Shown here piece by piece: positions 4,501 through 54,563 of a DNA stretch of 64,000 nucleotides (the stretch's first letter is position 1; each line of letters begins with the position of its first letter). Location of the stretch: contig LSRY02000058.1 of the NCBI GenBank assembly GCA_001643675.2, forward strand, positions 438,438 to 502,437. Direction: 5' to 3'. Origin of the DNA: Monocercomonoides exilis PA203 (lineage: Eukaryota; Protista; Preaxostyla). The notes beneath the pieces were generated by a model that saw nothing but the letters and a program-made list of their open reading frames with translations, was not told the DNA's origin and did no database searches. Both the position numbers and the translations under genes were made by a program.

Positions 4501-7500
4501 TTTCGTGCAATTCATTTCCAACCGTCCGCCTTTGTTTAGCAGGAAAAATATACTCCCTCCTTCGTTCGAGCTTGTCGATCCGCAACCATCAATGATAGAA
4601 TTTTCCATTTTCAATCTCATTTCATTCTGCACATTGCAGCAAAGCAACGAAGGGGTATTTGCCACATTGTGCTTCACATTCATGAATCTGCATTGCTCAA
4701 ACAAAAAGTTCCATGCCTCTCCCATATCGTCATCCTCTCTTCCGGAAATCACACTTTCACTCATCGCAATTGCACTTTTCCCGCTCAATGAAATATCTTC
4801 AAATGTCACATTGTTCATGGTTGTCACACAATCAGCTGATATGCTCATTATCTCATGCATCGTTGAGAATCCAGCTATTTCTGTCTTTTCAATAGAAACA
4901 ATTCCTTTCGAAGCACTGATCAGAACAAATGACACCTCATCTTTCACATTTTCATTTGTGTAAATTGAGCATCCGATAACACTCGTTTTGACTGCATCTG
5001 AACCTGTCTGGATAAGGATGTTTGCTCCATTCTCAAAGTCACTGGGAATCAGAATCCCCAATTCACTGAACTGAACAGCCCCTTTGCATTCAACAACAAC
5101 ATCTCCATCCCCTTCAAGTGCTTGAGCAAATCTGATTTTGTCTGATTCCATATTTGTTCCTTCCAATTTCAGCCCATTCATCTCTGTCACACTCCTCGCA
5201 TTGCAAACCCCGTGAAACATCATCGACTCAAGTGTTATATTGCTCCCTCGATTCAGCCCATAATCAACAGATTCACACGGAAACTCATATAGTCCACATA
5301 CAACAACATCATTTCCTTCTTCTGCTACATGCACACTCGAACCAATCGATTTCCAGAAATAGACCAGTGGGATTGCACATTCCCTGTTTTCTCCATCATA
5401 TCCCCTCATCGAGTCTTCGGTCAATGCCTCCAGTCTATCTTTCACAAATGGCAGTGTTTCGTTCTTGATGCTCTTAATAAGCGATGGAGATGAAATAAAC
5501 AAATCCTTCCCAAACTTCGCATTGTTTGGTTTATCAGATGAAAAAACAGGTGAGGATATCACAAACGCTTCCTCTTTCTCTTTCAACAACTGCAGCATGA
5601 TTCCTCCTCCATATCCAACACTTTCCTTTTCATATGGTGCTGCGCAACCATAAAACTCACACTTGCTCATCAACAGGTTCGTATTTGCAGACGCTTCATA
5701 AAAGAATGCCCCTCCTCCAATCTCATTTTCTTCTCCAACAACAGCACATCCTTCAAATGTGCAGTTATTTATTTCAACTTTGTAATCTCTTCCATCATTA
5801 TCATTCTCGTTCGAAAAGCCTACGCACCCTCCACTTCCCTTCGAACGAGTGATCGATGAAAATGTGCACTCAGACATCTCTTCAATAATCCCCCCGTGAC
5901 ACTCAACAACGCTCCCATCACCAAATGAGATTTCTCCAAAATGGCTGTTCGTCATATTCATAGAAGGCACGCTCTCTCCATTCCCTTCAACAACAATGAA
6001 AAACGATGAATCTCCTTTTTTGATATTTTTTGATCCAAACTCATTCACCTCCACGATCCCTCCAACAGCCTTCACAAACACTGTCGAAATAGTCTCAGCG
6101 CCTCCTTCCATCCCACATCCATTCAGTGTGAGCTTCCCTGAACAGCACTCAAACACACTTTCGTGAAAGGTCAGCGATTTCTTCAAAGAAAATACAATAC
6201 CACTCACAGACACACTGACTGAGTTTTCAATCAATCCACTTTGTGTTCCCTCTTTCTGATCAGAAACATCACATTTCATCTCATTCTTATTTGTTTTGAT
6301 GATCCATTCATAAGTTGGAAAATTAAATTCTTCCTCAAATGCAAACGATTCGAGAATGGTTATATCTTTTTTCTTCTCTTCAAAATGGTTTGACACAGCC
6401 TTCGCAATGGTAGAGCACGGAAACAATTCATACCCACACATCGAAAAGTCGTGACTTGATGATCCCCCAACAAAGGCAGACCCTGAAAAGTTATCCCACA
6501 GATACACCACCAACGGGATGGCAAATGTCTCATTCAATGTTGATCTCTCAAACCCATTCAGTCTTGTCAAGTCACTCATATCAACTTCAAATCCAATCGA
6601 CCTTCTGCTAATCACACTTGAAAGCTCATTCGCATTGATGAAGATTTCTTTCCCCTCTCTGGCATCACATCCAGCAAATGACGCTTTCTTCAAAATGAAT
6701 GAACTCGCGCCATCTTCCAAATGAAGATAAATCCCTCCTCCATATCCGTGCTCTCCATCTGTGTTTTGTGTTGCCTTGCAACTCGTAAATTGCAACAAAC
6801 CACTTTCATCATTTGAAAATATTGTTCTTGCTGAGTCAGTATTAGTCATGTTCCCTAAAGTGAATGTTGATCCTTCCTTCATCTCAGCCCACAACCCTCC
6901 TCCATTTCCTCCTTTGCTCCGGCATCCAGATATCATTCCTCCAACTATTTCCAGAGAACAATCTCTCCCAAGTGTGCATTCAACTGCTCCTCCATTTCCT
7001 TCAATTCTTCTGAAACCACCCATCGTATTGTTTGTGAGCTTTAGCATCTTTACTGAATTTGTTGAAATCACTCGAATTGATTCGGATGGCAAATCTGTTT
7101 GTGAATATGCTTTCGCTGAAAGTGTTGAATCTTTAATCGTTAAAGATGCTCCATTCTCCGCTTCAAACAAAATGCTATTTGTTGCAGTGCTAATATCCTC
7201 AACATTCATGAAGGTGAATGTACCAGCAGCATTGCTTCCATCAAGAAAAATCAATGGGCAATTTCCAATAAATAGAGACAATACATTCAACGATGAAACA
7301 GAAACCTTCCCTGTTGTTGCTGATAAAAACACATAAGATAACGCTGACTGGGAATTTTGAAAAGCCAGTGAGCAATCTTTAAGCGAAAATAATTGTGAGG
7401 AAGAATAGAAGAACGCTTTGTGATTTTGGAGAGCAGAAGGAACAGAGAAAACAAGTGATTTCAAAACAGTATTTCCACTTATTGTTATCAAACTTCCTTC

Positions 7501-39592: not shown

Positions 39593-41813
39593 GATGATTT
39601 CCAAAACTATGCCAATTCGGCTGCTGAGCTTTGTGTTGCATACCAAACAGCACAACCCTTTCGCCAACAGCTAACAAGACGTTTGCACTGCTGCTTGTGC
39701 CAATGCTCTTCTTTCTGCCTCTTTCTTCCCATTCTCTTCCTATTCTCTTCTTTTTGCTCTTCTTCTGCTTCTTCTTCTTGCACAACCGGTGGGTGTCTTC
39801 AATGCGATGTCCATCTGCCTTCCCTCTTTCCCACTCTCTCTTTCCCCTTTTTTTATTCTCTTCTGCTTTCTTTCCCCTTCCACTCACTTGCCTCTTCCTT
39901 TGCCTTTGCCTCTTCCTTTGTCTTTGACACTCATCAGAGAAGAAAAAGAGTAAAGCATTGAAAATGCCTCCAAAACTGACCGAAACACACAGAATATCTG
40001 AATTGTTTGAAGAAAAATCCCACAAAAGACGAAGAAGAGGAAGAAGAGGAAGAAGAGGAAGAAGAGGAAGAAGAAGAAAATCTCAAACATTTTTCGAGTG
40101 TTCTCTGCCATCCCATCAGAATTGTGGCTGTCTTTCTTCTACTCTTCATCCGACTCATTCTCATTTGCTGCACTTCCTCCTTTCATTCATCACACTTTCT
40201 GTGAAATCTGATGACCTCTGTGTTTTCTGATGTTTTGCAGAAGAACGAGGGAAGAGAAACACTTTTCGATTGCATTGGCTTTGCCGACCTCTGAAAAGAA
40301 GAGAAAGAAGAAGAAGTTGATGATAATGAAACGATAATGTTGATAATAACGATATTAAAGTAAATGAGGATGATGATGATGAAGATGATTGTAGAGTGTG
40401 CGATTGAAGATTTATTGGTACGCACACCAAAACAAGAACAGCAGCGCAGATGAAAGAAGAAAGCAATCGCAAATGGCTGTGGCCTCAAGGAATTGATGTG
40501 CAACTGCCAATGAGAAGCAACACGATGAAAAATGTTGTTTCTTTCTATTTCCTCTTTCCTCTTCTCAGCAGCTCAATCACAAAAGGAATGGCTAGAATTT
40601 TCTATTGATCTCAAGATAAACATTCCATTTGGTGCTTTTCTGATACAGCATATGATGATGATGAAAATAGTGCATGGAGAAGGATGATGTTTGATGTGCG
40701 TTTGATGAAGAAGAAGAAGAAATCCTTTTTCTTTCCTTCATATCTTTGTCGCTTCTGAGAATATGTCAATGAGTGAACATAAACCCATTTCCTTTTCCAA
40801 AACAATGCTGGCGAATGAAAAACAAAAAACGTTCGAAAGAATTGTTTCTATGGCATCTTCTTCCATTCTTTGCTTTCACAATCATCATTGTTGTTTGTTA
40901 TTTTTCTTTTCAATCCCTTTTCATTCAAAAAGCAGCCTTCAATCTGATTCTGCCTCCTCATTTTCCCTTCTTCCTTTCTCCAAAACAAATTCTCCCAGCA
41001 AATAGAATGCGTCAGCCATTTCTATCATGACTTTCATATTCCTATCATATGAAAAAATAAAAAGCAAAAAAAAAAAAAAAGTATTTTCATTAAAATACTC
41101 GAATAAAACAGAGTTTGTCGCATACCAATCGCTTATTGCATCCCTTCCTGCAACCACTTTGCATCAACAAAAACTGTCCATTTTCACTCATTCCAGTTTT
41201 TATCCTTTTTCTCTTGAACTGAAATTCCATCTCTATCTGTGAGAAAAGCACATCAAAAACCCAATCCAAAAGCTCATATAACCTTGTTCCATGCAGCCCA
41301 TCCCTTTTGCGAAAAGTGTCCATTTCGGCCAATCTTGGCAAAAACAATCATTTCTTTTAAAACATCGAAAATCTCTTCAAATAAAAATATCACAAATAAT
41401 CCACCAAAAGACACACATTAATATGTGGTGCAGAATCACAAAACTTCCATCGCTCACACCTCTTCTGTTCATCTATTTTCATCAATCTTCACAACATTCA
41501 TTTATTTCACAAACGCCATTTCTCATGAAAATACAGGTAATAAAATCATTTGCTCTAAATCATATGTTGTTCCATCTCAGAGGCAGATATCGCTGGACGG
41601 TGAGTAACAGCTGAAATATCAGAACATCAACAAAAATTTATTAATAATTCTCTATTATTCATCGGATCATAAATAAATGTCGAAAAATATAAAAGGAAAA
41701 TATTTATTTTTGATGTTATATGATACGCAACGTTGAAAAAGGGAATTAATTTTTAATTGAAGGGCCCATATTAGTCTGTGACAGAAAATAGAAAAGAAAG
41801 CAGTTTGAGACGC

Positions 41814-44800
41814 ATGGTTGTGGCAGTGTCAGGAATATTATATTGTGTGTGGATAATTAGTGTGGGGTGCATGTGCAAGGGTACCACAAGTGATGGAGCA
41901 GGCTTTGGAGAGAATTCAGCGAAAGAAGGAAAATTGGATTATTCTGAAGGCACATGGCCAGAAAAGGCTCAAAACAACAAAATTGGAGATGGCCATTTAT
42001 TTGACACACATATTGAAGGAAAAGAAGGTAGGGTGAGAGAGACCTGGAAAGAAGAGAGAATGATGAAGAAAAATACAAAACAATTGAATGAGAGAAGTGG
42101 AGAGGTTGGGAAAGTCCAAAAATGGGGTTTTTGTGAAGAGTGGAAAATGTGGGGAAAGGAGGGAGTGTGCGGTGGGAGTGGGGTTGAGGGAAGTGTTGTT
42201 GGGGTCAATTCATCATTGCAACTGAATTCATTGGCATTGATAGAAAAAAGTGGGGAGAGTGTGCTCAGGGCATCAGATGGAAGTTTTGTTGAGGTGAGTG
42301 GATGTGTTGTTGGAGTTGAGAGAGAGACATCCCTCTTTGATTTTTGTGGAAGCTGTGGATTGTTCACCAACATTTCCCTCAGATCGTCTTCATCCTCGAC
42401 TGAACAGATATTTCCACCACTTTTCTCTTCAAAAGCAATGGAAGGAGAGATTTCAGAGAAATGCCATGTTTCTGTTTGCTCTTCTCATTTCTCATCTTTT
42501 TACATATCTTCAGCCCCATTTATCTTATCGCGCTTTGTCACTCTTTCCCAATTAGAATTCTTCAACATCTCAACAACTCCATTGAAAACAACACATCCGG
42601 CTGAAGGGTTAAGCCAAATGGCGTTTCTGATGAGTGGATGTGAGTTTGAGTCAGTGTGGGATGTGTATGATGGGGGTATTGTCCCCTCACTGAACAGCCC
42701 CTCATCTTCCCTGGATGCCTCAAATACTTCATTTGTCAGATGCTATCGATCACAGAATATTGCAATCAGCGGGAGTGAGGGGAATCCATCGAAACAAGTG
42801 AGACAGAACGAGACGGACAATGGAACAAATTCATTCACTTGGTGCGAATGGAATGGCTCTAAAACAACTGAAAATAATAATATTCTCAATGATGGGACTT
42901 CAAATGGCGGAGCGATTTGCATGAATAATCTGGCATCGGGAACTCTTTCATTGAAATATTGCTCATTCAACGATTGCTATGCATATGCTTATGGCGGAGG
43001 AATCATGTGCTATAAAATCAGCTCAATCAAGGCTGAAAACAACTCATTCAATGCTTGCACCGCAAAAAATAATGGTGGTGGAATTTTTGCTTACGAAATT
43101 TATTCATGTGTCAGGATCAGCGGGTGCGAGTTCCAGAAATGCACAGCAAAAGAATGTGGAGGAGGCCTTTATCTAACATCTTTTCAGGTTTCTGGATCTT
43201 CATGTATTGGAACAGAAAATGGCAAAGGGGAAAGTGCTTGTGTGTTTGACTGCAGTTTCACTTCATGCTCAGTTACAAATTCGCAAGGTGGGGGCATGTG
43301 TTGTTCCACTGTTCCTGCTGCATTCAAAATGAGGAGCGTTCAGTTTATTTCGTGTTCGGTAGCATCAGATGGCGGAGGATTGGATTTTGATCCATGTCAA
43401 TCAATAGCTCCAAACAACAACATTTATAGTTATTTTCTCTTCTTCCATGATTGCAGGTGCACTAATTCTATTCCACATGGCCATGATGTATTTTTCCAAG
43501 ACGATTGCAATCATTTTTCATCGAATAACCCGTTCTATGAATCGTACACAACTAATAGTGATGATAAAAGAGTGTGCCATTTTTTTTTAAATGGAAGCAG
43601 TTATGTGTATCAGCATACAGAAACGAAGGGTTGGTTGAAGGAAGGTCCAAAGGTTCTATCTGTCGGGGTGAATGGAGACGACTCCAATACTTTGTGTGGG
43701 ATGAGTGAGGCCGCACCATGCAAAACATTGTGGCATATGGTAGGGACTGATTTTGTACGACTATGCTCAAAGATCACAGTACTTGATGGGAAGCATGTGA
43801 GCGAAAAGGAAACAATCAATATTGGGGAAAAGAAGATTTCTGTTTTGGGGAAAGGGAAGACAGTGAGTGTGATTGGAACAGGAGCCCTTTCATCGTCTTC
43901 GACAACGCTGTTTTGCATATCTTCTGGTCAACTGGAGGTGGGGTATGTGGGGATCGATCACAACGCAACAGGAAGTTTATCACCGAGTGTGTTTGTGGTG
44001 TTTGATGGGAGCGGGTCGCTTTCGCTGGAGGATGTGGTGATCGACTCTTCCACATCAGGAGGGAGTGGAATCTCGTCATCTGTGCTTGAAGTGGCGCTGG
44101 GGCAGTTGAAGATGATTGATGTTGAGATCAAAAATATAAAAATGAGTCAACCACTATTTGCTGAACCATCATCAACAGGATCATCATCAGGAGAAAGTAT
44201 GCTTTGTAATTTGACAATTCGGAATGTCAATCGGACAACAGGAGATGGAGTGGTGATGGCAAAGAATGTGAAGGCAGGAGAGACATTTGTGGTGTGGAAC
44301 ACAACAATAGAAGGGTGTGAGTGTGTGAATGGGAATGGGGGAGGGATCAAAGTTGAACTATTATCATCGTCAAGCAAAGCTCTAATTGGAGATTCAACAT
44401 TGCACAGCGGAGGGATAACAGCATTTAATCAATGCAAGAGCAGTGGATGTGGAGGAGGAATATTTCTTTCTCTGGGAGATACAGATGCGAAGTTTGAGTT
44501 ATCAGGAGAATTGATATTTGATAGAAATGAGGCAGAACATGGAAGAAATGCATTTATTTTGGCAACTGATCTGAACAAAACGGTCACAAATGGATCGTTC
44601 AAGTTTGATTATTCCTCAATGATAAATGATAAAACTCTTTTTGTTGGAAGTGATAACTTTCATTTAAACAAGGATTTATTCATGTTTCTGATTCCATACA
44701 GCTCAATTGAGATATTTATCTCATCGAATGGATTTGATGTTGCAAGATGTGGAAGTGAAGAAGAGCCGTGCTTCACAACGTGGAAAGGGATGGAAAACAT

Positions 44801-47800
44801 GGAAAGGGGGAATGGAAATAAAACAATTCAAATTGAAGGATCAACAATTATTCGAGATTCTTTCAATGTTTCCAACTATCAGATCAAAAAGAGTGTAAAG
44901 ATGGGAGAAGAAGATACAAAAGCGATATTGAATTTTGAAAAGGCAATTGGAAATCAACTGGAATATTTCATGGAAAATGATGAGCATCTTGAATTGATGA
45001 ATATCCAACTTCAACTGTCAACTGGATTTGAGAACTCAGCCAAAACGATTATTTCCAACAAAAATGGAGAATTGGTGATAACTGGATGTTCATTCCATTC
45101 AGAGGCTGGAGTTAATAATGGATTTAATTGTGTATTTGTGGATGCGATTGGAGGAACTGTGGAAGTGAATGATTTGTCGATTGAATCATGCAATGTTGGA
45201 AACAGCATATTTGTCATTCATGATTCTGGAATTACTTGCCATTTTGTGAATGTTCGTGTGGATTCATTGAATGAAAGCAGAGGATGTCTTCTTCTGATCA
45301 AAGGAACTGAACTAACAACAAAGATAAATGAAGTGAGTGAGGAAATGAGTCTCAATATTAATAATTCATCATTTTCAGGGGTGAAGAGAAGTGACAATGG
45401 AGCAAGCATTTTGGAGTCAAAGAGTGAGAAAAAGATTTGTTTGATTGTAAATTCGAGCAACATCACCGAAGACAAAGCAGAATCAAGTGAAAAAGGAGGT
45501 GCGATATTCTTCACATTGGGTGCATCAGGATCGATGAAGATGATTAAGTCCGAAGTCAGTCAATGCAGCTGCCCCAATGGGAAAGGAGGAGGAGTGTATT
45601 TGGCAACAAAAGAAACAGGGTTTCTTGATTTCACATTTGTGGGGATGAAATTCAGCGCAAATACAGCAATAGTGGGAAATGACATTTTTATCGAATGTTT
45701 CAACATCACATCCCAGATTAATGAAAGCCAATTCCAGTTTGATCTTCGAGAAGGCCATTACACTCGTTTCAATGCGATATATGGAATTGATCTCTGCGAA
45801 TACACAAGCGATACGAATCTGATTGGATTTGTGACTATCCATCAGAGCGATACGATCATTGTGAGCAGTGTGAATGGGTCGAATGAGAGGCAATGCGGAA
45901 CCAGCACACTTCCGTGTCATTCAATTGATTGTGGATTGATGCATCTGACTTCAGATTTCATAAGTCTGATGTTTGTTGTTGAAGAGAGCGTGATTGGTGA
46001 AGAGGCAAGTCTGAAAGAAATGAGTTTAAGCTCAAAGAATAGAGACTTGTGTGAAGTTGAGGTGGAATCAGGGATTGAAAAAACAAAGAATGCGCTGTTG
46101 ACAACAACTGGAGAAGTGTCATTTGTGAGAGTGAATTTTGTGTTTGATTCGAATTTCATTTCTTCGCATGAATCACTGATGTCGCCAGAAGGAGGAATCC
46201 TTGAGGTGATGAATTGTTCATTCAGCTCAAAACAATCAGCAGAAGAAGGAAATGTTGCTTTTACCATTATTCCATTTCACATTTTCAACATGGCAAAGGG
46301 AGAATTGCAACTTGATGGATGCACAATATCAAATCTCGTGCTTCAAAAATCTGCATTGCATCTTTCTTCTCAACTTCCATCAGTGATTTATTTGTTTGAG
46401 ATCAGCAATTCAACTATTTCTCATTCGCTTGTTGAAATTATTGAATGTGGAAAATTAACAATCAAGAATTTCAACACAGAAAATATCACAGTTGAGGGAA
46501 ATGAAGAATCATTGATATGTTGCCTGTCAATGAAAAAGACGATGCAATTGACAAATTGCACAATAAGTGGAATCAGTTCAAAAATCACGAAAGGAAAATT
46601 GATGAAAATGGAGAATTGTTTGGATGTGAAATTTGATTGTTGCATTTTTGATGGAAGTTCAAAGGAAAGAAATGAGAAGAATTTGAATGAAGGGGAAGAG
46701 ATGTGCAGATGGGATGGATCCCTTGTGGATGTTGTGAAGAGTTCTGTGACGATGAAAGACACAACAATCTCGAATTCACCAGATGGTGGAATAACAATGA
46801 GAGGTGGAAATGTGATTATTGAGAAAGGAGAGTTCATTGACAACAATCCATCAATTGAAGGATATCCATCGCTGAGAAGAAACATCATCTGTTCAGATTC
46901 TGGAACATTGAATGTGATGAGTTTGAAAGGAGGAGATGGAGTTTTGCCAAATTCATCACTTTGGATGTTGGATGAAGGGTGCAGTTTTGAAGGAATTGCT
47001 TCAGAGAGAGAATCATCATTTTTCATTCCAGTATTGGAGAGTGTGGAAGCAAAGGAAGAGACAGATAGAATGAAACTGACATTCAAAGGATTGCTTCTTG
47101 TTCCATGTAATCTGTCATTCTCAGTTGTGAAGAGGAAAGGAGAAGAGAAACATATTGAGCATTATGATTTTGATTCAAATGGGGTTTTGTCAGAAAGAGA
47201 AGCAGAAGGGAGCGTGGCAAAAGATCTCATCAGAAGTTGTGGAGATGAAATAGAAGTGAGTGTGCATGTTTTATTTGGGAATAAAGAATCTCCTTCATCA
47301 ACAACTTCATTCATTCTGAAGAACAAAAGTGAGATTGAGCCAAAAAGAGAAGAAAACATTGTTGAAAGTGGAAAAGGAGGAAAATCTTATTGGATTATCA
47401 TTGTTCTTGTGTTGTCAATGTTATTTTTGATTGTTTTGATTGGATTTATTTTGTTTGTCGTTCGGTGGAGGAAGGCAAAGAGACGAACAGAAGAACTGGA
47501 GGAGATTGTGAATGACACAGTGAAGAAGGATCCGAAGGCATTTGAGATGGTCACGATGGAGATGTCACCAGAAGAGCAGTGGAGGAGAGAGGAGAGAGAG
47601 ACAGAGAAGAAGAACGAAGAGAGGATCAAGAAGAGGGTGTATGATACGAATATGCAACATTCTGAATCATCCGAGCATCTTCTATCTGAGAGTGGTTCGA
47701 CAGAATACATTCTTGGAAAGGATTCGGACAAGATTCCAGAATGGGTATTGGAGAAGGTTGAGGAAGAGGAAATAAGGAAGAGAACACCATCTCCATCGGT

Positions 47801-48707
47801 CTCATCCACTTCAACAACTTCAAATGATTCAGATTCAACATTTGTTCGAGGAGATGATCTGTGCCCCACCACATCATCGATGTCGAATCTGGTGGATGCA
47901 ATGGCCTGCTCATCGCCTCATGAAAAGCTGATTGTGGACTTGAGGGATTCGTTGTTCATGTTGTTGCATGGAAAGAACGAGAAGAAGGAGATGGAAATAG
48001 GCACTCTTCAGGAGAGAGAACAAACAGCAGCCCAAATCCTGTTCTGGGTTGCTAATCTTGCTCTCCACTCCTTTGATGAAATGGAAAACCCTCTTCAATC
48101 TCTTTCCAATCTGAGTCCGCATATTGTGTTGTTCTCAGAACATATGGTCATTTGCATTGTGATGCACTCTGATTTCTCGTCTGATGATGATTCTGATTCA
48201 TCCTCCATCTCTTCGTCAACTGTTGTGACATCAGCCAGTGATGATGATGATGACAGTGACTCTCTTCCTTCATCAGCGTTTGAGGATGATGAATACAACA
48301 GGAAGGAATGCCTGAGGTGGAAGGCGCCAGAGCTGCTGATGAACAAGAAGATGGGTGCAACAAAAGAATCTGTGGCATTCTCGATAGGGATGATGCTGTG
48401 GGAGTGTGTGACACTGGAGATTCCGTTTGGGGAGTATGAGGCAGCGATTGCAGGAGACAAGATTGTTTGTGGGGAGAGGCCGAGGATGGGGGATGAGCAC
48501 TCGACTCTCGAAGAGGTGGTGAAGGGGTGTCTGTCAGGCGAGGAAGGGCTGCGGCCGACATTGGGAGATTTGAAGCGGGAGTTTCTTGGGCACTTTCCGA
48601 AAGAAGTGGTGGTCATGACAGTTTCGGATGCAGTTGCGATTCAGTCTTTGATGTATTGCGAAGCGAATGGACAGGATAATGAGAATAATGAGGATAATGA
48701 AGAATAG
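41814..48707 (+). CDS. Giant receptor-like surface protein (about 2300 aa): Cys/Gly-rich beta-helix-like ectodomain, TM helix and degenerate (TKL-like) kinase C-lobe
   Basis: Hydrophobic N-terminus; GGAI/GGGI and CG..PC repeats; TM YWIIIVLVLSMLFLIVLIGFILFVV followed by RWRK. The tail has LRWKAPELL, AFSIGMMLWE, IPF, GERP and CL..RPT but no GxGxxG, HRD or DFG. Confidence 0.85.
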   Translation: MVVAVSGILYCVWIISVGCMCKGTTSDGAGFGENSAKEGKLDYSEGTWPEKAQNNKIGDGHLFDTHIEGKEGRVRETWKEERMMKKNTKQLNERSGEVGKVQKWGFCEEWKMWGKEGVCGGSGVEGSVVGVNSSLQLNSLALIEKSGESVLRASDGSFVEVSGCVVGVERETSLFDFCGSCGLFTNISLRSSSSSTEQIFPPLFSSKAMEGEISEKCHVSVCSSHFSSFYISSAPFILSRFVTLSQLEFFNISTTPLKTTHPAEGLSQMAFLMSGCEFESVWDVYDGGIVPSLNSPSSSLDASNTSFVRCYRSQNIAISGSEGNPSKQVRQNETDNGTNSFTWCEWNGSKTTENNNILNDGTSNGGAICMNNLASGTLSLKYCSFNDCYAYAYGGGIMCYKISSIKAENNSFNACTAKNNGGGIFAYEIYSCVRISGCEFQKCTAKECGGGLYLTSFQVSGSSCIGTENGKGESACVFDCSFTSCSVTNSQGGGMCCSTVPAAFKMRSVQFISCSVASDGGGLDFDPCQSIAPNNNIYSYFLFFHDCRCTNSIPHGHDVFFQDDCNHFSSNNPFYESYTTNSDDKRVCHFFLNGSSYVYQHTETKGWLKEGPKVLSVGVNGDDSNTLCGMSEAAPCKTLWHMVGTDFVRLCSKITVLDGKHVSEKETINIGEKKISVLGKGKTVSVIGTGALSSSSTTLFCISSGQLEVGYVGIDHNATGSLSPSVFVVFDGSGSLSLEDVVIDSSTSGGSGISSSVLEVALGQLKMIDVEIKNIKMSQPLFAEPSSTGSSSGESMLCNLTIRNVNRTTGDGVVMAKNVKAGETFVVWNTTIEGCECVNGNGGGIKVELLSSSSKALIGDSTLHSGGITAFNQCKSSGCGGGIFLSLGDTDAKFELSGELIFDRNEAEHGRNAFILATDLNKTVTNGSFKFDYSSMINDKTLFVGSDNFHLNKDLFMFLIPYSSIEIFISSNGFDVARCGSEEEPCFTTWKGMENMERGNGNKTIQIEGSTIIRDSFNVSNYQIKKSVKMGEEDTKAILNFEKAIGNQLEYFMENDEHLELMNIQLQLSTGFENSAKTIISNKNGELVITGCSFHSEAGVNNGFNCVFVDAIGGTVEVNDLSIESCNVGNSIFVIHDSGITCHFVNVRVDSLNESRGCLLLIKGTELTTKINEVSEEMSLNINNSSFSGVKRSDNGASILESKSEKKICLIVNSSNITEDKAESSEKGGAIFFTLGASGSMKMIKSEVSQCSCPNGKGGGVYLATKETGFLDFTFVGMKFSANTAIVGNDIFIECFNITSQINESQFQFDLREGHYTRFNAIYGIDLCEYTSDTNLIGFVTIHQSDTIIVSSVNGSNERQCGTSTLPCHSIDCGLMHLTSDFISLMFVVEESVIGEEASLKEMSLSSKNRDLCEVEVESGIEKTKNALLTTTGEVSFVRVNFVFDSNFISSHESLMSPEGGILEVMNCSFSSKQSAEEGNVAFTIIPFHIFNMAKGELQLDGCTISNLVLQKSALHLSSQLPSVIYLFEISNSTISHSLVEIIECGKLTIKNFNTENITVEGNEESLICCLSMKKTMQLTNCTISGISSKITKGKLMKMENCLDVKFDCCIFDGSSKERNEKNLNEGEEMCRWDGSLVDVVKSSVTMKDTTISNSPDGGITMRGGNVIIEKGEFIDNNPSIEGYPSLRRNIICSDSGTLNVMSLKGGDGVLPNSSLWMLDEGCSFEGIASERESSFFIPVLESVEAKEETDRMKLTFKGLLLVPCNLSFSVVKRKGEEKHIEHYDFDSNGVLSEREAEGSVAKDLIRSCGDEIEVSVHVLFGNKESPSSTTSFILKNKSEIEPKREENIVESGKGGKSYWIIIVLVLSMLFLIVLIGFILFVVRWRKAKRRTEELEEIVNDTVKKDPKAFEMVTMEMSPEEQWRREERETEKKNEERIKKRVYDTNMQHSESSEHLLSESGSTEYILGKDSDKIPEWVLEKVEEEEIRKRTPSPSVSSTSTTSNDSDSTFVRGDDLCPTTSSMSNLVDAMACSSPHEKLIVDLRDSLFMLLHGKNEKKEMEIGTLQEREQTAAQILFWVANLALHSFDEMENPLQSLSNLSPHIVLFSEHMVICIVMHSDFSSDDDSDSSSISSSTVVTSASDDDDDSDSLPSSAFEDDEYNRKECLRWKAPELLMNKKMGATKESVAFSIGMMLWECVTLEIPFGEYEAAIAGDKIVCGERPRMGDEHSTLEEVVKGCLSGEEGLRPTLGDLKREFLGHFPKEVVVMTVSDAVAIQSLMYCEANGQDNENNEDNEE

Positions 48708-50151
48708 GGAAGTGCCAGCAGCAGTTGCAGTTTGAAATAGTTTGGAATTGGAATGAAGGCGAGCAGAAAGAGGAAATGGAGGAAATATGGATGAATAAAT
48801 ACGGAAGGAGTTGTTTTTTTGATGAAATGGAAACATCAGAGCAGTCACATTACCAGTGGTTGCTTTGTGGAATTGAAGTTAACCAGTTTTTTATTTTAAA
48901 AAAAAATTTTTTTTTCATTTTTGAGAACGTGTTTTGATTTGTGGGAAAGCCACAAATGAATATTTGTTTTTATTGTGCTTGTTTTTTTTTTCACTAGATT
49001 TTGTCATTCACCAAAACAACTGTTTGTGTTTATCTTTTTTTTCATTTATCAAGCCTTTGTGATTGTATTTCACTTTTGATTGTTAATAGACATGAGTATT
49101 TATTTTCTGTTGTTTTTCATATTTATTCTTTTGATTGATTTTCTAACACCTTTTTGAATGTTTTCACACATGGAGATTATGTTAAACCATTCTTATTTCG
49201 ATTGTTAATCCGATATATATTTACAGTCATCTTCTTGTGTAACTCAAACCATTTTCGTTATTTTTGTCTAACTTTTCAATTTTTGTTTCATTCATTTTTT
49301 ATTGATTGAGTGTTTTTCAGCACGCAACACTAACACAGTTTGAATAGTCAAGTTATTAAGATTTATTTTAAAACACTGAATTTTTTCATCAAAATAGAAA
49401 CGCATCTAATACTGTTCGAAGGTTATCAAAAATTTAAGATTCTTCCATGTGGAAGGATTCCGCGGTTGAGAATAGCTTTTATTTTTTCTATTTTCTTTTT
49501 CAAAATAATCTCGGAATACCCTTTCATATTTTGATAATTAATAATCAAGTTAAAACATAATTCTTTTTTTTCATGTTTATTGTCTGAAATTCGAAATTAT
49601 TGTTTTTGCTAAAATAGGATAAATGAAAAATAATCATACGAATGTCGTCTGTGACAAAAAAGATAAAAAAAAAAAGATGATGTCAAAAGATGAACCACAA
49701 ATACATGATTCAATTATTGGTTAACAATTATAATATTTGATTGAGTCTTTGTGAGTGTGTGTTTTTTTGAAAATGATATTTCCAAATGGAGCTGTTAACG
49801 ATTTTTTGCACAATAAATAACTTTGTGAAAAATCGAAAAATTTCAGAAATGTGACTTTGAGCAAAAACTTGAAAAATTGAATTTTTTTGTGACTAAAACG
49901 TTCATATGTTTACAAACAGCACTCATTTTTTACACTAAGCAATATTTTCAAAGGTTTTTTGGAAGTTTTACAACATAACCCATAATATTTTTTTTGTAAA
50001 AGTGATTTTTTCTAATAAAGTTTAAGATATTTATCAAACAAAAATTTTCATACAAATAATAGAGGAATAACTTCCAAGTTATATATTTTTAGAATGAATT
50101 TCATTTTGAACTTTGGAGAAATGAATGATTTTACTCATTTGAGAATATTAC

Positions 50152-53100
50152 AGGTTAGTTAGATACAAAATTCTGATGTTTTTAATATCCGCAACTGACT
50201 TTAGTATTTTTTCTCATTAAATTTTTCAGATGATTGGAGGATTGTTACATGCGGAAACTTTTTGATTTCGAAGGAGAAACTCTGATGATACAAATGTTGC
50301 TTAAAAAAACAGAAAAAAATGAAAGGAGAACATTGTTATTTCTTGTTTTCAAGTTTGATATTGTTTTCAGTTCTTTATTGAATATTGAGCTGGTATTAAA
50401 ACAAGAAATTGAAAAAAAAATACTGATAGAATTACTCATGAAGCAATGAAAGAATAATTCAATATAACTTTTCATGAACATCATTACAGTTATAAATAAT
50501 TTCTCTCAACTCTTTATTCTTTTGAAATTATCATTCTCACACATCCCATTGACTGAATGCTTTCAACTAATTCATTTCTTCCTAAATTTTCATATATTCA
50601 ACATTTTTCTAATAAACAAAGAATAACACACGAAAAAATTCAAATAGACACTTTCGATGAATATTACGAAAACAATAGAATTTCAAATTCACTCGGAAAT
50701 ACATCATTACAGTTTGCTCTTGATATTATTCAATTTTTGATCGTCATTCATATTTGATTTGAAATATTTTTTCTTTATTCGATTATGTGGAACAATTTTC
50801 ATTTGTTTGTTTCATATGCTGTTTTTCTTTATTTTTCACAAAACAACTTTTTTCATAACTGATATACAAAAAGATTAAAGTGAAGATGTTGTATTATATT
50901 TTTCAAAATCATTTCAACCTGCTATTCATTAAAGAAAGCGAAGTGCTGTTTTGGAAGCCCGTTTCTGAGTTATTTATTATCGTTTTTATCCATTACATAT
51001 CAAAGAAATATAATTTATTCTGATATCTTTCGAATAGTCTAAAAATTTTATAAAAATTGTTTTTTTTTGTCGAAGAAAAATGGTCAAAAAAATATGTAAT
51101 AAAATATTTGCGCTTTCAAAAAATGCCAATGGAAATCGAATTTGGCTCGTTTGTATCAAATACGGTCACTAGTGAAATTTTGAATGAAAATGAAAACTCT
51201 GTGTTTTCAAATGATACTGAAAATTACAATGTTTGTTTTTATTTGATAAAATTTTATTATTTTTATTGTTTTTATATCACAGAGAACTAATGAAGAAAAA
51301 AATTCAAAGGACAAACACGAACAATCCAATAACATTTCAGAAAACGTTTGTTTTTTTCATGAAAAATTAAGAATTTATTGTTTTTATTATATTCAGTCAT
51401 TTTCAACTCCACAAATGCAAATTCGCACACTTTCCGACAATTTCGATGAAAATGAGTTCATCAGAAGGGAAGAAGTGTGCGAAAGAATGATGTCGTTCAT
51501 GAAAGAGTTTCTATCTCCATCACAAAACACTCATCACTGTTCTTCATCTTCAAATTGCACTCCAACTTCTTCAATTCCATCTCTTCAAAAAGTTTCGTTG
51601 CATAAAAAAAGTTCATCAAATAAATTACTCTCTTCAGATTCGACAAGAACACCATCGATAACTCACATTCTTCCTTCAGTAAAATACAGTTCGAAAAAAA
51701 GCAAATCCGACAAATATGACAGGGCCATCGACTATTCAGAATCAGAAGAAATAACAAGTGAAGTTTCTAAGTGCGATGAAAATGATGAAGTGGATGAAAA
51801 TCCTTTGATAGAAGAAGAAGAAACTGATAATGAAGAGAAAAAAATGAAAGAATTATCCGAAAAAGATATTCACGAGATAATTGATAAAACATATGACGCC
51901 GTTGAATATCTGAGAAACGATCATATGTTTCAAGCGGAAAAAGCAGATACCCTTAACAGCTTGTCTTCTCCCTCAAAAACTCCTGCTCGTGCTTCTCCCC
52001 CTTCCACATCCTTCTCCGAACTATTTCAAACATCTTCAACAGATGTATCTCCTAATTCTCTCTCTTCCTCTCTGTCGTCATCGTCCATCATTCCTTCCTC
52101 CTCTCTCTTCTTTCATCCCACTAGAATGGATGAAGCAGTGAGCAGAGTCAGTACGGAAAAAGCGAAAAAATATTTGAACGTTGAATCGATTTGGTCCGAT
52201 GCTACCAAACGAAAACATTCGTGGGCGAACCGCTTGCTGACAATATGGGCTGAAAAAGTGGAAATCGAACCTTGGCCACTGCATCATGAAGCAGCAAGAG
52301 GGTTCGTTTTGTTCTGCGGGAAAGAGTGCCACTACCCTCTTTCCTCCATATGCTACGTCATAATACCTTCTCTAAAAAGAATTAACATCATAAAAAGGGG
52401 AAAAAGATTAAGTTCTAATACTTATCATTCTTTAAGAGATGCTGTGAGATGTCTCAAACACAGCAGTGAAGTGCAAAAAACAGTTACAAAAAAAGAACCT
52501 GCTGTTCTTAAAGATGTCAAAAGAATAGTTCATTTCATTCCCAACACAATGCTCGATAAGGCGCTTGAATCATCTCTTTATCTCGTCGCTGTTCACACAG
52601 GGGCTCGCGCTGTTACACTTTCCAACGTGAAACTGTCAGATATCAAACAAGTTGTGAGATCAAAGGAGAATGGAAAACTGTTATGTACAATCCAGTACAA
52701 CAGAACAAAAGCATCGCACAACTGGGGGCACAAGGTCACAATTGAAGGCGACGAAGATGAAGAAAATGATGACGATCCAGTCTATTGGCTCTCGTTGCAT
52801 GTGTATCAAAAAACAGGAGTTAGACTGTCAGATTGGAACAACGCAAAAGAAAAAGCAAACCTCAATCATCTTGTGTGGCCACTGAGCACAGACAGCATGA
52901 GGGAGCGTTTTAAGAGCAGAGCGGAAGCTGCTGGTTATCCTCGTCATCTGTTCTGCTTCCACTCGCTTCGTAGTGGCTTCATATGCACCGCTCTTATCGC
53001 TGCGAACAAAGACGATGAAACCCAACGAGCAGTCATGGAAAAAACAGCCTTTGTTGCTGGCTGGCAACAGTGTCGACTTTCGCAATGCACTTACATCAAA

Positions 53101-53787
53101 GAAGCCGTGAAGCGAGCCATGGTTGCATCAAGACTTATAACATCCCATGATGATAGCAACCAAACAGTGTTCGATGAAACACTATTGGAGTTGGAAGTGT
53201 TTCATGGTGTTTCTTTTAAGGAAAAAGCGAAAAAAGAGAAAACCACAATGGAGAAGTTTTCGGAGTTCGTGAAAAGAAGAATGAGTGAGTATTATGGAGA
53301 GTTGATTGTGGAGGAAGCGAAAAGAGATAGACACATTAGAAACGGTTCAAAGAAGTAGGTTGAAGAAAATGAAGAGTTGATGATGGTTGCAGAATACAGA
53401 ATGAAAGAATTAAATGATAAGAAAAAAGAAGAACAGAGAAAGACAGACCTATATACTGTTGCTTCGACGATTTCCAACATGTTCATACAAGATCAGCTCC
53501 TTGAACAAGGGAAGACACCAGAAGAAATGGCAACAATATTCTGCGGAATGGCTGAGAGTTGCACATCAAAGGCGCCGGTGAGAAAGAACAAGTTCAAAGT
53601 TGATCGAAAGTCACATTTAACAGTTTATGAGAGAAGAAAGAAAGAGAGAGAAGAAGTGTTGAAAGAGAGAGAAAGAAACGAAAAGAATAACATAAGAAGA
53701 ATCATATGGAGGAAAGAAGATGATGACATACTAGTTAGACTTTATAATGAAGGCGAAAGAGCTACAGACATGATGAAGGCTTTCCCC
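50152..53787 (+). mobile_element. Subtelomeric tyrosine-recombinase element copy 1 (decayed, 3'-truncated)
   Basis: Starts at the telomere-like junction AGGTTAGTTAGATACAAA (50152-50169), the same motif as at copy 2. Contains the YR gene and ends abruptly at a telomeric tract inside the Myb domain. Confidence 0.6.
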
Positions 53788-53790
53788 TAG
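51123..53790 (+). pseudogene. Tyrosine recombinase-Myb fusion gene, copy 1 (introns 51231-51282 and 51346-51396; nonsense TAG at 53356; truncated in the Myb domain)
   Basis: Catalytic set HTGAR (R at 52606), RTK, FHSLRSGF (52960), AGW...TY (Y at 53092). The frame continues past a single TAG into 53377-53790 with IIWRKEDDDILVRLYNEG..DMMKAFP, the first two Myb helices. Two phase-0 GTTTGT..CAG introns join ATG 51123 in frame. Confidence 0.85.
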
Positions 53791-53800
53791 GTTAGGTTAG
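53788..53800 (+). repeat. Interstitial telomere-like tract TAGGTTAGGTTAG
   Basis: Read directly; lies at the junction between the two recombinase modules. Confidence 0.8.
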
Positions 53801-54563
53801 ATACAAAGGCGACGCCTGCGTGTGAACAGGTCAGCAACGGGGCTCATGTGGACAAAAATCAATATTCTCGAATGATGCAAAAAAATCCAAGAAATTACGA
53901 AAAATTCCAAAAAATTTGAAAAAATATGTGTTTGTCAAGAAAATCTGATAAGACGATCAAAAATCGCATTACTAGGTTGCCCAACATCGGAAAGCTTCAT
54001 CTGCTGATATTTGTTCATCGAAAAAGTGTCCAAATGAAAGCTTGAATTTTTTCGTTTTTTCATATTTTTTTTTATTTCTCACAAAAAGTTCTTCATTGAG
54101 AAATAATAGAAAACTTTTTTGAAAAAAAAATATTTGATCAAAAAAAATTACCACAATTTAATTTCGAATCAAAACTTGCAAGGGAAACACCCACAGGAAC
54201 AATTAGCAACTTTTGGTTTTCAATTAAAACATCGTATGATTTATTAATAAATACGTCATCCGATTTTCATTGTTTTTTTAATCCAATTGTTATTCTGATT
54301 CAGCTTCTATCAAATCATCACTTTGTATGTTTTCTTTTGATATAACAAATATTTTCAAGTTACCAACCTTTAATTGGAATATTTGATATGCTTTGTTTTT
54401 CGTCTCTTATCAATTAATAACAATAGAATTTCTTCTTTGAGTAATTTTCACAAAATATGATTCGAAATTTCACAAAGAGCCAAGATCGCCTGTGTGGTCT
54501 TTTATTATTAATATTTGTCTTATTATAATAATTATATTTGATTTTTCTTTAAGTGGAAGAGCA

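What the first reader, a model, noticed from the sequence alone, without database searches (positions are those of the whole stretch)
53788..53807. Shared left-end signature GGTTAG(G)TTAG-ATACAAA upstream of both recombinase genes
Seen: 50152-50170 reads AGGTTAGTTAGATACAAAA and 53789-53808 reads AGGTTAGGTTAGATACAAAG. They are identical except for one G, lie about 0.8-1 kb upstream of each YR start codon, and the sequence beyond them shows no obvious similarity. Inference: this is the attL-like junction, where telomeric target sequence (..GGTTAG) joins a short conserved element end (ATACAAA). A conserved short end with divergent interior is what a recombinase-recognised terminus would look like.
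Basis: partly seen in the sequence, partly recalled or inferred. Interest (0 to 1): 0.85.

Follow-up and report, generated by a model that had tools for sequence, protein, structure and literature searches.

The report
Telomere-seed junction of recombinase-Myb element
The string marks where one copy of a recombinase-plus-Myb gene unit was joined to a 13-letter telomere seed at a chromosome end of the protist Monocercomonoides exilis. The ATACAAA part is the first letters of that one unit family, not a mark shared by all such units.

Summary
Both strings are present exactly as reported and are unlikely to be chance. The window is the right end of a Monocercomonoides exilis contig that ends in a (TTAGGG)n telomere.

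53788-53800 (TAGGTTAGGTTAG) is a short telomeric tract laid on the broken Myb domain of the upstream recombinase gene. 53801 (ATACAAAGG...) is the constant first base of a unit of at least 5.8 kb ("el2"). Seven genomic copies have seven different left flanks, and the five whose downstream sequence was held have five different truncated 3' ends.

The generalisation fails. A telomere tract followed by ATACAA occurs genome-wide only in the el2 family. The closest relatives of recombinase 1 start at window ~50926-50936, with other first letters (GGGTTA|AGTAATA..., GGGTTA|AGTC...). So 50152 is not that gene's left end; it is most likely a relic of an older el2-type junction.

What is general, also in the oxymonad Blattamonas, is this layering: a 3'-truncated unit, then a short telomere seed in fixed orientation, then a family-specific 5' end ahead of an outward-pointing recombinase-Myb gene.

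The recombinase has a Cre-like fold and an R-K-HxxR-W-Y set. No conserved right end was found.

Whether units are joined by the recombinase or copied from seed-primed ends is unresolved. The scan has noted this family before at other ends of this genome.

The parts
50153..50162 (+). Degenerate internal telomeric tract GGTTAGTTAG. It is the most centromere-proximal tract of the stack.
   Evidence: It matches the el2-type seed (TTAGG-TTAG units) with one G missing.
50163..50170 (+). ATACAAAA, probably a relic of the first 7-8 bases of an el2-type unit.
   Evidence: Identical to the el2 start for 7 nt and unrelated afterwards. It is the only non-el2 place in the genome with a telomere-like tract followed by ATACAAA.
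50171..50925 (+). AT-rich, single-copy, non-coding segment of unknown origin between the relic junction and the recombinase-1 unit.
   Evidence: No other genomic match. No similarity to the el2 5' region.
50926..53787 (+). Recombinase-1 unit (annotated protein P0009 at 51415-53358, plus the Myb-coding frame 53377-53790). Its 5' end is nearly complete; its 3' end is cut inside the Myb domain.
   Evidence: Homology to C64, C5 and C80 starts at 50929-50936. The frame ends at ...MMKAFP directly before the tract. 29% identity to recombinase 2 over 397 aa.
53788..53800 (+). 13-nt telomeric seed TAGGTTAGGTTAG.
   Evidence: The same 13-mer precedes five el2 copies with different left flanks; C1 carries a 2-substitution variant.
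53801..59080 (+). el2 unit: one recombinase-Myb gene, no LTR or TIR, 3'-truncated here at 5.29 kb (full length at least 5.8 kb).
   Evidence: blastn boundaries. 3' ends compared. No terminal repeats.
54458..58185 (+). Gene MONOS_13507 (1201 aa, two short 5' introns). The tyrosine-recombinase core is about aa 590-1000 and the Myb domain is near the C terminus.
   Evidence: (PF00249, E 1.4e-5).
59080..59092 (+). 13-nt telomeric seed TAGGTTAGGGTTA on the truncated el2 end.
59093..59963 (+). Non-coding unit starting AGCTTTTCG. Together with the next tract and unit, 59080-60335 is 99.5% identical to the end of C12.
   Evidence: A third left flank is seen as a loose end at 59082.
59964..59993 (+). 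30-nt internal telomeric tract.
59994..60521 (+). Terminal non-coding unit starting TCGTCCATATG.
60522..64000 (+). CAAAC followed by TAGG and the terminal (TTAGGG)n array, G-strand on +. The array is punctuated by TTCAAAC-TAGG variants.

Best explanation
The string at 53788-53807 is one layer boundary in a head-to-tail stack of single-gene tyrosine-recombinase-Myb units at a chromosome end.

The upstream unit was eroded into its Myb domain. A short telomerase-type seed (13 nt, starting with the stereotyped TAGG) sits on the broken end. The next unit is attached by its constant, family-specific 5' end (ATACAAAGG for the el2 family), with its gene pointing at the telomere. That unit was later eroded and seeded in turn.

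ATACAAA is therefore the 5' terminus of one family. The 50152 copy is most likely the stump of an older el2-type junction, cut down to about 8 nt. It is not the left end of recombinase 1.

Shown here:
- the junction anatomy, copy boundaries, orientation and end-restriction;
- the recombinase fold and catalytic set;
- purifying selection on the gene;
- the same architecture in a second genus.

Inferred: the encoded recombinase joins or exchanges DNA at the seed|unit boundary (Crypton-like site-specific recombination aimed at telomere seeds). Homology between stereotyped seeds helps whole terminal blocks spread between ends.
For: - Left boundary: the same tract plus ATACAAAGGCG occurs in 6 copies with unrelated left flanks. 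C21 has the same first base without a tract.
- Variable 3' ends (4.8, 5.29, 5.5, at least 5.8 kb): in four of the five copies a short telomere-type tract follows the end, and in three of those a 5'-complete next unit follows the tract. C45 runs on past the 5.8-kb point with no tract.
- Recombinase 1 is cut mid-Myb exactly at 53788.
- Family-specific 5' ends elsewhere are each constant across copies with different flanks: AGTAATA in C64 and C5; AGC in C56, C12 and a third flank among the reads.
- End restriction: 59 of 71 recombinase hits lie within 60 kb of a contig end, 48 pointing outward and 11 inward.
- Blattamonas nauphoetae: all three homologues examined lie near contig ends and point outward. 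TTAGGGTTAGGGTTAG|TATCAG occurs twice with different flanks, and TTAGGGTTAG|TAATCG once, on the gene's strand: 0.4 and 0.7 kb upstream of the annotated gene start in L063 and L062, about 0.3 kb inside it in L064.
- Enzyme: invariant R, K, HxxR, W and Y columns. Cre, XerA and IntI are the top Foldseek hits, E 3e-5, probability 1.00. Atlas neighbours are Phage_integrase clusters.
- dN/dS is 0.16-0.21 among el2 copies.
- No RT, LTR or TIR.
Against: - No conserved right end or circle junction was found, so a classical attL/attR pair is not shown.
- The constant 13-nt tract, and the transfer of a multi-unit terminal block at 99.5% identity between C56 and C12, fit seed-primed copying without any recombinase.
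- The Myb domain is c-Myb-like, not telobox/TRF-like, by sequence.
- The structure model is only moderately confident (mean pLDDT 58.8, TM 0.24-0.34).
- Eleven copies point inward.
Confidence: 0.55

Rival explanations
1. Seed-primed copying only. Eroded ends receive a one-round telomerase seed, which anneals to an identical internal seed at another chromosome end and primes break-induced replication to that end. The recombinase-Myb genes are a subtelomeric host or passenger gene family, comparable to yeast Y' or fungal TLH helicase genes. The constant '5' ends' exist only because copying always starts at a seed.
For: - Stereotyped seeds start with TAGG and are mostly 12-13 nt.
- In C12 the seed is preceded by CAAAC, which is filler on a truncated unit and the same letters that start terminal arrays.
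- The block seed-AGC unit-30-nt tract-terminal unit is 99.5% identical between C56 and C12, while the units to its left are unrelated.
- No defined 3' end.
Against: - It does not explain how each of ten or more distinct unit types first acquired a seed right at the start of its 5' region, in the same orientation, in two genera.
- The C21 el2 copy starts at the very same base without any seed.
- The gene is under purifying selection and has diversified into many families restricted to chromosome ends.
Confidence: 0.27
2. ATACAAA is a short recombinase-recognised terminus conserved across divergent recombinase-Myb elements, and the two strings are attL junctions of the two genes.
For: - The two strings share 18 of 20 positions with unrelated interiors.
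- The family nearest to el2 (C12, 62% aa identity) has one ATACAAAAAC about 1.03 kb upstream of the conserved N-terminal motif, against 0.96 kb in el2.
Against: - The left end of recombinase 1, defined by its relatives, lies ~765 nt downstream and reads AGTAATA or AGTC.
- No other family has telomere tract + ATACAA anywhere in the genome.
- The C12 site has no telomeric tract and is expected by chance at about p 0.06. Its boundary cannot be defined because that region is single copy.
Confidence: 0.12
3. The 50152 string is a chance look-alike in AT-rich DNA, and only the 53788 junction is real.
For: 8 of 15 genomic GTTAGATACAAA sites are background. The tract at 50153 is imperfect, and nothing related follows it.
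Against: Six further upstream bases also match the el2-type seed. It lies on the right strand, at the inner edge of the stack. Shuffles never give two such sites, and my estimate of chance is about 0.01.
Confidence: 0.06

Closest known systems
Crypton DNA transposons (tyrosine-recombinase-only elements; Goodwin et al. 2003; Kojima and Jurka 2011, PMC3212892)
   Same: One gene encoding a tyrosine recombinase, often with an extra DNA-binding domain. No reverse transcriptase, no LTR and no TIR, so boundaries are hard to see.
   Different: Cryptons are dispersed and carry 4-6-bp direct repeats at both termini, thought to be crossover sites. These units are confined to chromosome ends and oriented toward the telomere. 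They are joined by one constant end to a telomere seed and show no defined second end. Phylogenetic placement among Crypton clades was not tested.
Telomere-specialised retrotransposons (Drosophila HeT-A/TART/TAHRE, Bombyx SART/TRAS, rotifer and fungal Athena/Coprina Penelope-like elements, Magnaporthe MoTeR)
   Same: Head-to-tail terminal stacks. One constant end lies proximal and the distal end is variably truncated. Short telomere tracts lie between units.
   Different: No reverse transcriptase is encoded. The proximal constant end is the 5' end of the gene, the opposite of what target-primed reverse transcription from the G-strand overhang gives.
Yeast Y' elements and fungal telomere-linked helicase (TLH) repeats
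   Same: A subtelomeric gene-bearing repeat, with internal telomere tracts between tandem copies, spreading between ends by recombination.
   Different: The gene is a recombinase-Myb fusion rather than a helicase. There are many diverged families, each with its own precise 5' end.
Cre/XerA/integron-integrase type tyrosine recombinases
   Same: Two-domain fold and the R-K-HxxR-(H/W)-Y catalytic set.
   Different: Long disordered N-terminal region, a C-terminal Myb domain, a eukaryotic gene with introns. No inverted-repeat core site was recognised at the junction.

Membership tests
Tyrosine recombinase superfamily | Catalytic R...K...HxxR...(H/W)...Y set in order | tested here: met
   Invariant R186, K220, H304, R307, W338 and Y348 in 9 sequences, including Blattamonas.
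Tyrosine recombinase superfamily | Cre/Xer-like two-domain fold | tested here: met
   Foldseek top 30 hits are all Cre, Tre or XerA, E 3e-5 to 2e-3, probability 1.00. The model is only moderate (pLDDT 58.8, TM 0.24-0.34). Pfam's Phage_integrase model does not reach threshold on the window proteins.
Crypton | Encodes a tyrosine recombinase but no reverse transcriptase; no LTR or TIR | tested here: met
   Single long ORF with only a Myb Pfam hit. No terminal direct or inverted repeats in 53760-59110.
Crypton | Short (4-6 bp) direct repeats at both termini and a defined pair of ends consistent with a circular intermediate | tested here: not met
   Five el2 copies have five different 3' ends. No second conserved end or circle junction was seen.
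Crypton | Recombinase groups with a named Crypton clade in a tree | not tested
   No reference Crypton sequences were available from the tools. The nearest database relatives named by a source are oxymonad proteins; the rest of those looked up are unnamed metagenome or sequencing-run records.
Telomere-specific retrotransposons | Encodes or depends on reverse transcriptase, and attaches by the 3' end of its RNA to the G-strand | tested here: not met
   No RT domain in the unit's single long ORF; the minus-strand ORFs scanned lie in the C45 and C12 downstream regions, not in el2. The gene's 5' end is proximal to the centromere.
Telobox (TRF-type) Myb telomere-binding domain | Single Myb repeat most similar to TRF1/TRF2/Taz1 with a telobox helix 3 | tested here: inconclusive
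   The profile search of PDB sequences finds c-Myb, B-Myb and Reb1 (E 9e-4 to 2e-2) and no TRF chains. Binding specificity cannot be read from this.
Y'/TLH-type subtelomeric repeat | Internal telomere tracts between tandem units, and spread of terminal blocks between ends | tested here: met
   Tracts of 6-134 nt between units. A block 99.5% identical is shared by the ends of C56 and C12.
Y'/TLH-type subtelomeric repeat | Helicase gene | tested here: not met
   The gene is a recombinase-Myb fusion.

The most novel reading that the evidence does not exclude
The recombinase-Myb protein joins the 5' end of its own unit directly to a natural or freshly seeded chromosome terminus. The constant register ...GGTTA(G)| would then reflect a fixed telomere end or a one-round telomerase product. 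Oxymonads would thus have a DNA-based, recombinase-driven way of rebuilding eroded chromosome ends that works alongside telomerase. That would be a DNA-transposon counterpart of the Drosophila retrotransposon telomere.
Probability: 0.2. Interest if true: 0.9.

Novelty: new variant of a known kind. Interest (0 to 1): 0.6.

Why it matters
All telomere-specialised mobile elements described so far are retroelements. A tyrosine-recombinase DNA element that lives only at chromosome ends, and is always joined by one precise end to a telomere seed, would be a new way for selfish DNA and telomeres to interact.

It would also give a testable enzyme-substrate pair: the protein and the seed|unit boundary.

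For this finding specifically, the result sets the scope of ATACAAA. It is the terminus of one family and is useful for mapping that family's copies. It is not a universal recognition motif. The general feature to model is the telomere seed plus a family-specific 5' end.

I found no published description of such elements in the two M. exilis genome papers or in three full-text searches.

Tried and rejected
- Fetching upstream regions of about 40 further copies failed. The 5' ends of most families therefore remain unread.
- The look-up of encoding contigs does not serve the window's own genome.
- The 5' region of the C12 family is single copy, so the boundary of its candidate ATACAAAAAC start cannot be defined.
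- No similarity was found between 50163-50920 and the el2 5' region or the C12 5' region beyond low-complexity T-runs.
- No Rfam family, tRNA or stable fold at the junction.
- No LTR or TIR.
- ORFs in the long regions downstream of the recombinase gene in C45 and C12 have no Pfam hit.
- I rejected TTCAAAC as the conserved right end of the units. In C12 the CAAAC is filler after a truncation point, as the C45 homologue shows, and the motif occurs 148 times, at contig termini in all 100 places listed. No internal copy that could be a telomerase RNA gene appeared among the 100 places listed.
- Only DNA contigs of the same sample were on offer for reads. They confirm junctions but cannot show circles, transcript starts or expression.
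- Metagenome relatives gave no clear telomere context. One Logan contig had none. One JGI contig has (TTCGGG)x2 about 640 nt upstream of the match, which is too weak to use.
- The RNA-mediated addition model was set aside. It would need an antisense template and an RT that the units do not encode.

Full report
WHAT THE WINDOW IS

The window is G000:C56:438438-502437, the right end of a 502,437-base contig. The assembly has 82,301,135 bases in 101 contigs. The protein encoded at 54458-58185 is 100% identical to MONOS_13507 of Monocercomonoides exilis. These figures match the published Nanopore assembly of strain PA203 (PMC8767320).

From 60527 to 64000 the + strand carries the G-strand of a (TTAGGG)n telomere, with frequent TTAGG units and recurring TTCAAAC-TAGG insertions. 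Up to about 49.8 kb the window holds ordinary genes: calreticulin, a WD40 protein and kinases. The last 10 kb is a stack of units separated by short telomere tracts.

THE OBSERVATION

Both strings are present as reported. The shared 13-mer with up to one mismatch occurs twice, against 0.10 expected, and 0 of 100 shuffles reach two. From GGTTAG and ATACAAA frequencies in the window, I estimate about 0.01 for a chance look-alike at 50152. Contigs built from short reads of the same sample cross 53788, so the junction is not a long-read artefact. Their loose ends at 53788 reproduce the left flank of the C60 copy.

WHAT 53788-53807 IS

blastn of 49-60.6 kb against four other chromosome ends shows a repeated unit that begins at 53788/53801 and runs to 59080 in the window. 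I call this unit el2.

Left junctions:
- At C45, C51 and C56 the junction reads: unrelated flank, then TAGGTTAGGTTAG, then ATACAAAGGCGACGCC. C60 and C66 read the same.
- C1 has a 13-nt variant with two substitutions.
- C21 starts at the same A of ATACAAAGG behind a non-telomeric flank.

In the window the left flank is the reading frame of recombinase 1. It stops at ...MMKAFP in the middle of its Myb domain.

The right ends differ in every copy whose downstream sequence was held: 4.8 kb (C1), 5.29 kb (window), 5.5 kb (C51) and at least 5.8 kb (C21, C45). In C1, the window, C51 and C21 a telomere-type tract of 7-19 nt follows the end. In the window, C51 and C21 a further unit then begins at its own constant first bases: AGCTTTTCG, AGTGTCAC, ATGGAAA. 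C45 runs on past the 5.8-kb point with no tract. The unit has no LTR or TIR, no known RNA family or tRNA, and no stable fold at its start.

WHAT 50152-50170 IS NOT

A DNA search with 49700-51400 finds the relatives of the recombinase-1 unit at C64, C5, C80 and C15, at 82-86% identity. Their homology starts only at window 50929-50936.

Read in orientation, these copies have their own junctions at that point: GGGTTAGGGTTA|AGTAATAAGCGAAGCG (C64), TAGGTTAGGGTTA|AGTAATAAGCG (C5) and GGGTTA|AGTCTTAAAGAAAGCGAAG (C80). The window keeps TCATTAAAGAAAGCGAAG at 50926 without a tract.

The distance from this start to the recombinase core is 1310 nt in the window, 1306 nt in C64 and 1302 nt in C5, so these are collinear copies of one family. 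The 50152 string therefore lies about 765 nt upstream of the true left end of recombinase 1. The DNA in between is single copy and non-coding, and it is unrelated to el2.

IS ATACAAA GENERAL?

No.
- Of 15 exact GTTAGATACAAA sites in the genome, six are el2 copies and one is the 50158 site. Eight have no telomeric context and no similarity to each other. The reversed control gives 9 hits.
- A pattern that allows either repeat length and any register (TTAGG, optional N, TTA, 0-3 N, ATACAA) finds only five el2 copies and one internal background site.
- About 30 N-terminal exons of other families are known by coordinate, and none has such a site nearby.
- The family nearest to el2 (C12, 62% aa identity) has one ATACAAAAAC at a comparable distance. 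It lacks a tract, is expected by chance at roughly p 0.06, and cannot be tested because its 5' region is single copy.

The 50152 tract uses the el2-type seed (TTAGG then TTAG), not the TTAGGG-TTA type seen before other units. Together with ATACAAA it matches 18 of the first 20 el2 junction positions. The most economical reading is a stump of an older el2-type junction, eroded to about 8 nt before the next DNA was added. That is the same process that truncated the other units, only more severe.

WHAT IS GENERAL

Every unit boundary I could read has the same form: a truncated older unit, a short telomere tract on the G-strand, then a family-specific first base.
- Tracts are 6-134 nt with a mode of 12-13 nt.
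- Many tracts start with TAGG, and most end in GGTTA or GGTTAG.
- Within a family the tract is constant although the left flanks differ: el2 in five copies; the AGC unit in C56, C12 and a third flank seen in reads; AGTAATA in C5 and C64.

Of 71 separate recombinase hits, 59 lie within 60 kb of a contig end, 48 pointing outward and 11 inward. Twelve could not be placed. Contig lengths came, and from the terminal motif positions.

In Blattamonas nauphoetae, the only other named organism with homologues, all three genes examined lie near contig ends and point outward. Each has a G-strand tract on the gene's strand near the annotated gene start: TTAGGGTTAGGGTTAG|TATCAGTCATG twice with different left flanks, 0.4 kb upstream of the start in L063 and about 0.3 kb inside the annotated gene in L064, and TTAGGGTTAG|TAATCGAGC once, 0.7 kb upstream. 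The seed-plus-5'-end architecture is therefore conserved across genera, while the first bases are not.

THE PROTEIN

The two window genes share 29% identity over 397 aa. Nine family members, including Blattamonas, keep invariant R, K, HxxR, W and Y columns. A moderate AlphaFold model (pLDDT 58.8) finds Cre, Tre, XerA and integron integrase as its best PDB matches (E from 3e-5, probability 1.00, TM 0.24-0.34). ESM Atlas neighbours are Phage_integrase clusters.

The C-terminal domain is Myb (PF00249, E 1.4e-5). By sequence it is nearer to c-Myb and B-Myb than to TRF proteins, so telomere binding is plausible but not shown.

A profile search finds 682 representatives in 1.8 billion proteins. Of the ten looked up, those named by a source are from the two oxymonads; the rest are unnamed ENA or Logan records. 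Among four intact el2 copies dN/dS is 0.16-0.21, so the protein is kept functional.

MECHANISM

Shown:
- Units sit with a constant 5' end on a short telomere seed.
- Distal ends are eroded and re-seeded.
- Whole terminal blocks move between ends. 59080-60335 is 99.5% identical to the C12 end, while the units to its left are unrelated.

CAAAC followed by TAGG is how new telomere tracts start. In C12 the CAAAC follows a truncation point that the C45 homologue reads through. The motif occurs 148 times against 0 for the control, at contig termini in all 100 places listed. This suggests that the 13-nt seeds are stereotyped telomerase products.

Inferred: the recombinase acts at the seed|unit boundary to join or exchange DNA. 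This is Crypton-like site-specific recombination whose target is a telomere seed.

Against a classical attL/attR picture, no second conserved end was found.

The main rival is seed-primed break-induced copying, with the genes as passengers. It explains constant seeds and block transfer. It does not explain three things: why ten or more unit types in two genera each carry a seed exactly at the start of the gene's 5' region; why the C21 copy starts at the same base without a seed; and why the gene is under selection and diversified. The two processes may well act together.

A retro-type addition is unlikely. There is no reverse transcriptase, and the gene's 5' end, not its 3' end, faces the centromere.

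COMPARISON AND NOVELTY

The units work like Cryptons in gene content and like HeT-A/TART, Athena or MoTeR stacks in architecture, but they meet the full definition of neither (see the membership table). Neither M. exilis genome paper mentions recombinases or transposons at telomeres. Full-text searches for tyrosine recombinase with telomere terms found no such element, and the Crypton survey reports dispersed elements with short terminal direct repeats.

Earlier notes of this scan describe the same family at other ends of this genome. I treated them as leads and re-derived what I use here.

LIMITS

- Own-genome DNA could not be fetched, and no loci were cut. Most family termini were therefore tested only by pattern and coordinate.
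- No RNA runs were available.
I sent no pure telomere repeat to any collection search.

Noticed in passing
window 60520-62945; genome-wide contig termini: TTCAAAC-TAGG punctuates the terminal array 8 times in the window. The 16-mer CTAACCTAGTTTGAAC occurs 148 times in the genome (control 0), at contig ends in all 100 places listed. In C12 the CAAAC is filler after a truncation point. It looks like the start signature of new telomere synthesis, possibly copied from the flank of the telomerase RNA template. No internal (gene-like) copy was among the 100 places listed.
   Followed up: partly
window 59080-60335 and L055:3296-4557 (C12 end): A block made of seed, AGC unit, 30-nt tract and terminal unit is 99.5% identical at two chromosome ends whose neighbouring units are unrelated. 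This indicates a recent transfer of a whole terminal block.
   Followed up: partly
L046/L047 (C45 709000-728999) and L054/L055 (C12): Two recombinase families (62% aa identity) share a 76-80% identical module 2.7-3.1 kb downstream of the recombinase gene. There is no telomere tract for 11-13 kb, and most ORFs there lie on the opposite strand with no Pfam hit. Full-length units may be much longer than the truncated copies.
   Followed up: partly
G000:C25:5292-10970 (+) and C25:2540051-2541082 (-); also C6, C57, C58 left ends: A minority of recombinase copies (11 of 59 near ends) point inward. C25 has matching inward-pointing copies at both ends.
   Followed up: no
L064:14432-22900 (Blattamonas nauphoetae): Between telomere tracts of 42-72 nt, a short unit starting CAACCTACTCCTAAACC recurs at least six times ahead of the terminal array. 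This is a non-coding stacked unit, analogous to the AGC and TCG units of M. exilis.
   Followed up: no
window 41778-48707 (+) and 1546-10443 (-): Two giant intron-free ORFs (2309 and 2965 aa) have no significant Pfam hit. By eye, the first has GGG-containing repeats, a membrane-span-like hydrophobic stretch and a C-terminal region that looks kinase-like, just inside the subtelomeric stack.
   Followed up: no
window 49002-49793 and L061 (C59:54540-55460, minus): 85-88% identical sequence proximal to the recombinase stacks of two different chromosome ends. The homology ends at 49792 without a telomere tract.
   Followed up: partly
L066:584-595 (JGI metagenome contig C687J35504_10010069): A distant recombinase homologue (32% identity) has (TTCGGG)x2 about 640 nt upstream of the match. 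This is too short to count as a telomere tract.
   Followed up: no
window 53358-53377: The recombinase-1 frame is interrupted by a stop 18 nt before the frame that encodes its Myb domain. The public annotation ends the protein at 53358. Whether this is an intron or a mutation was not resolved.
   Followed up: no
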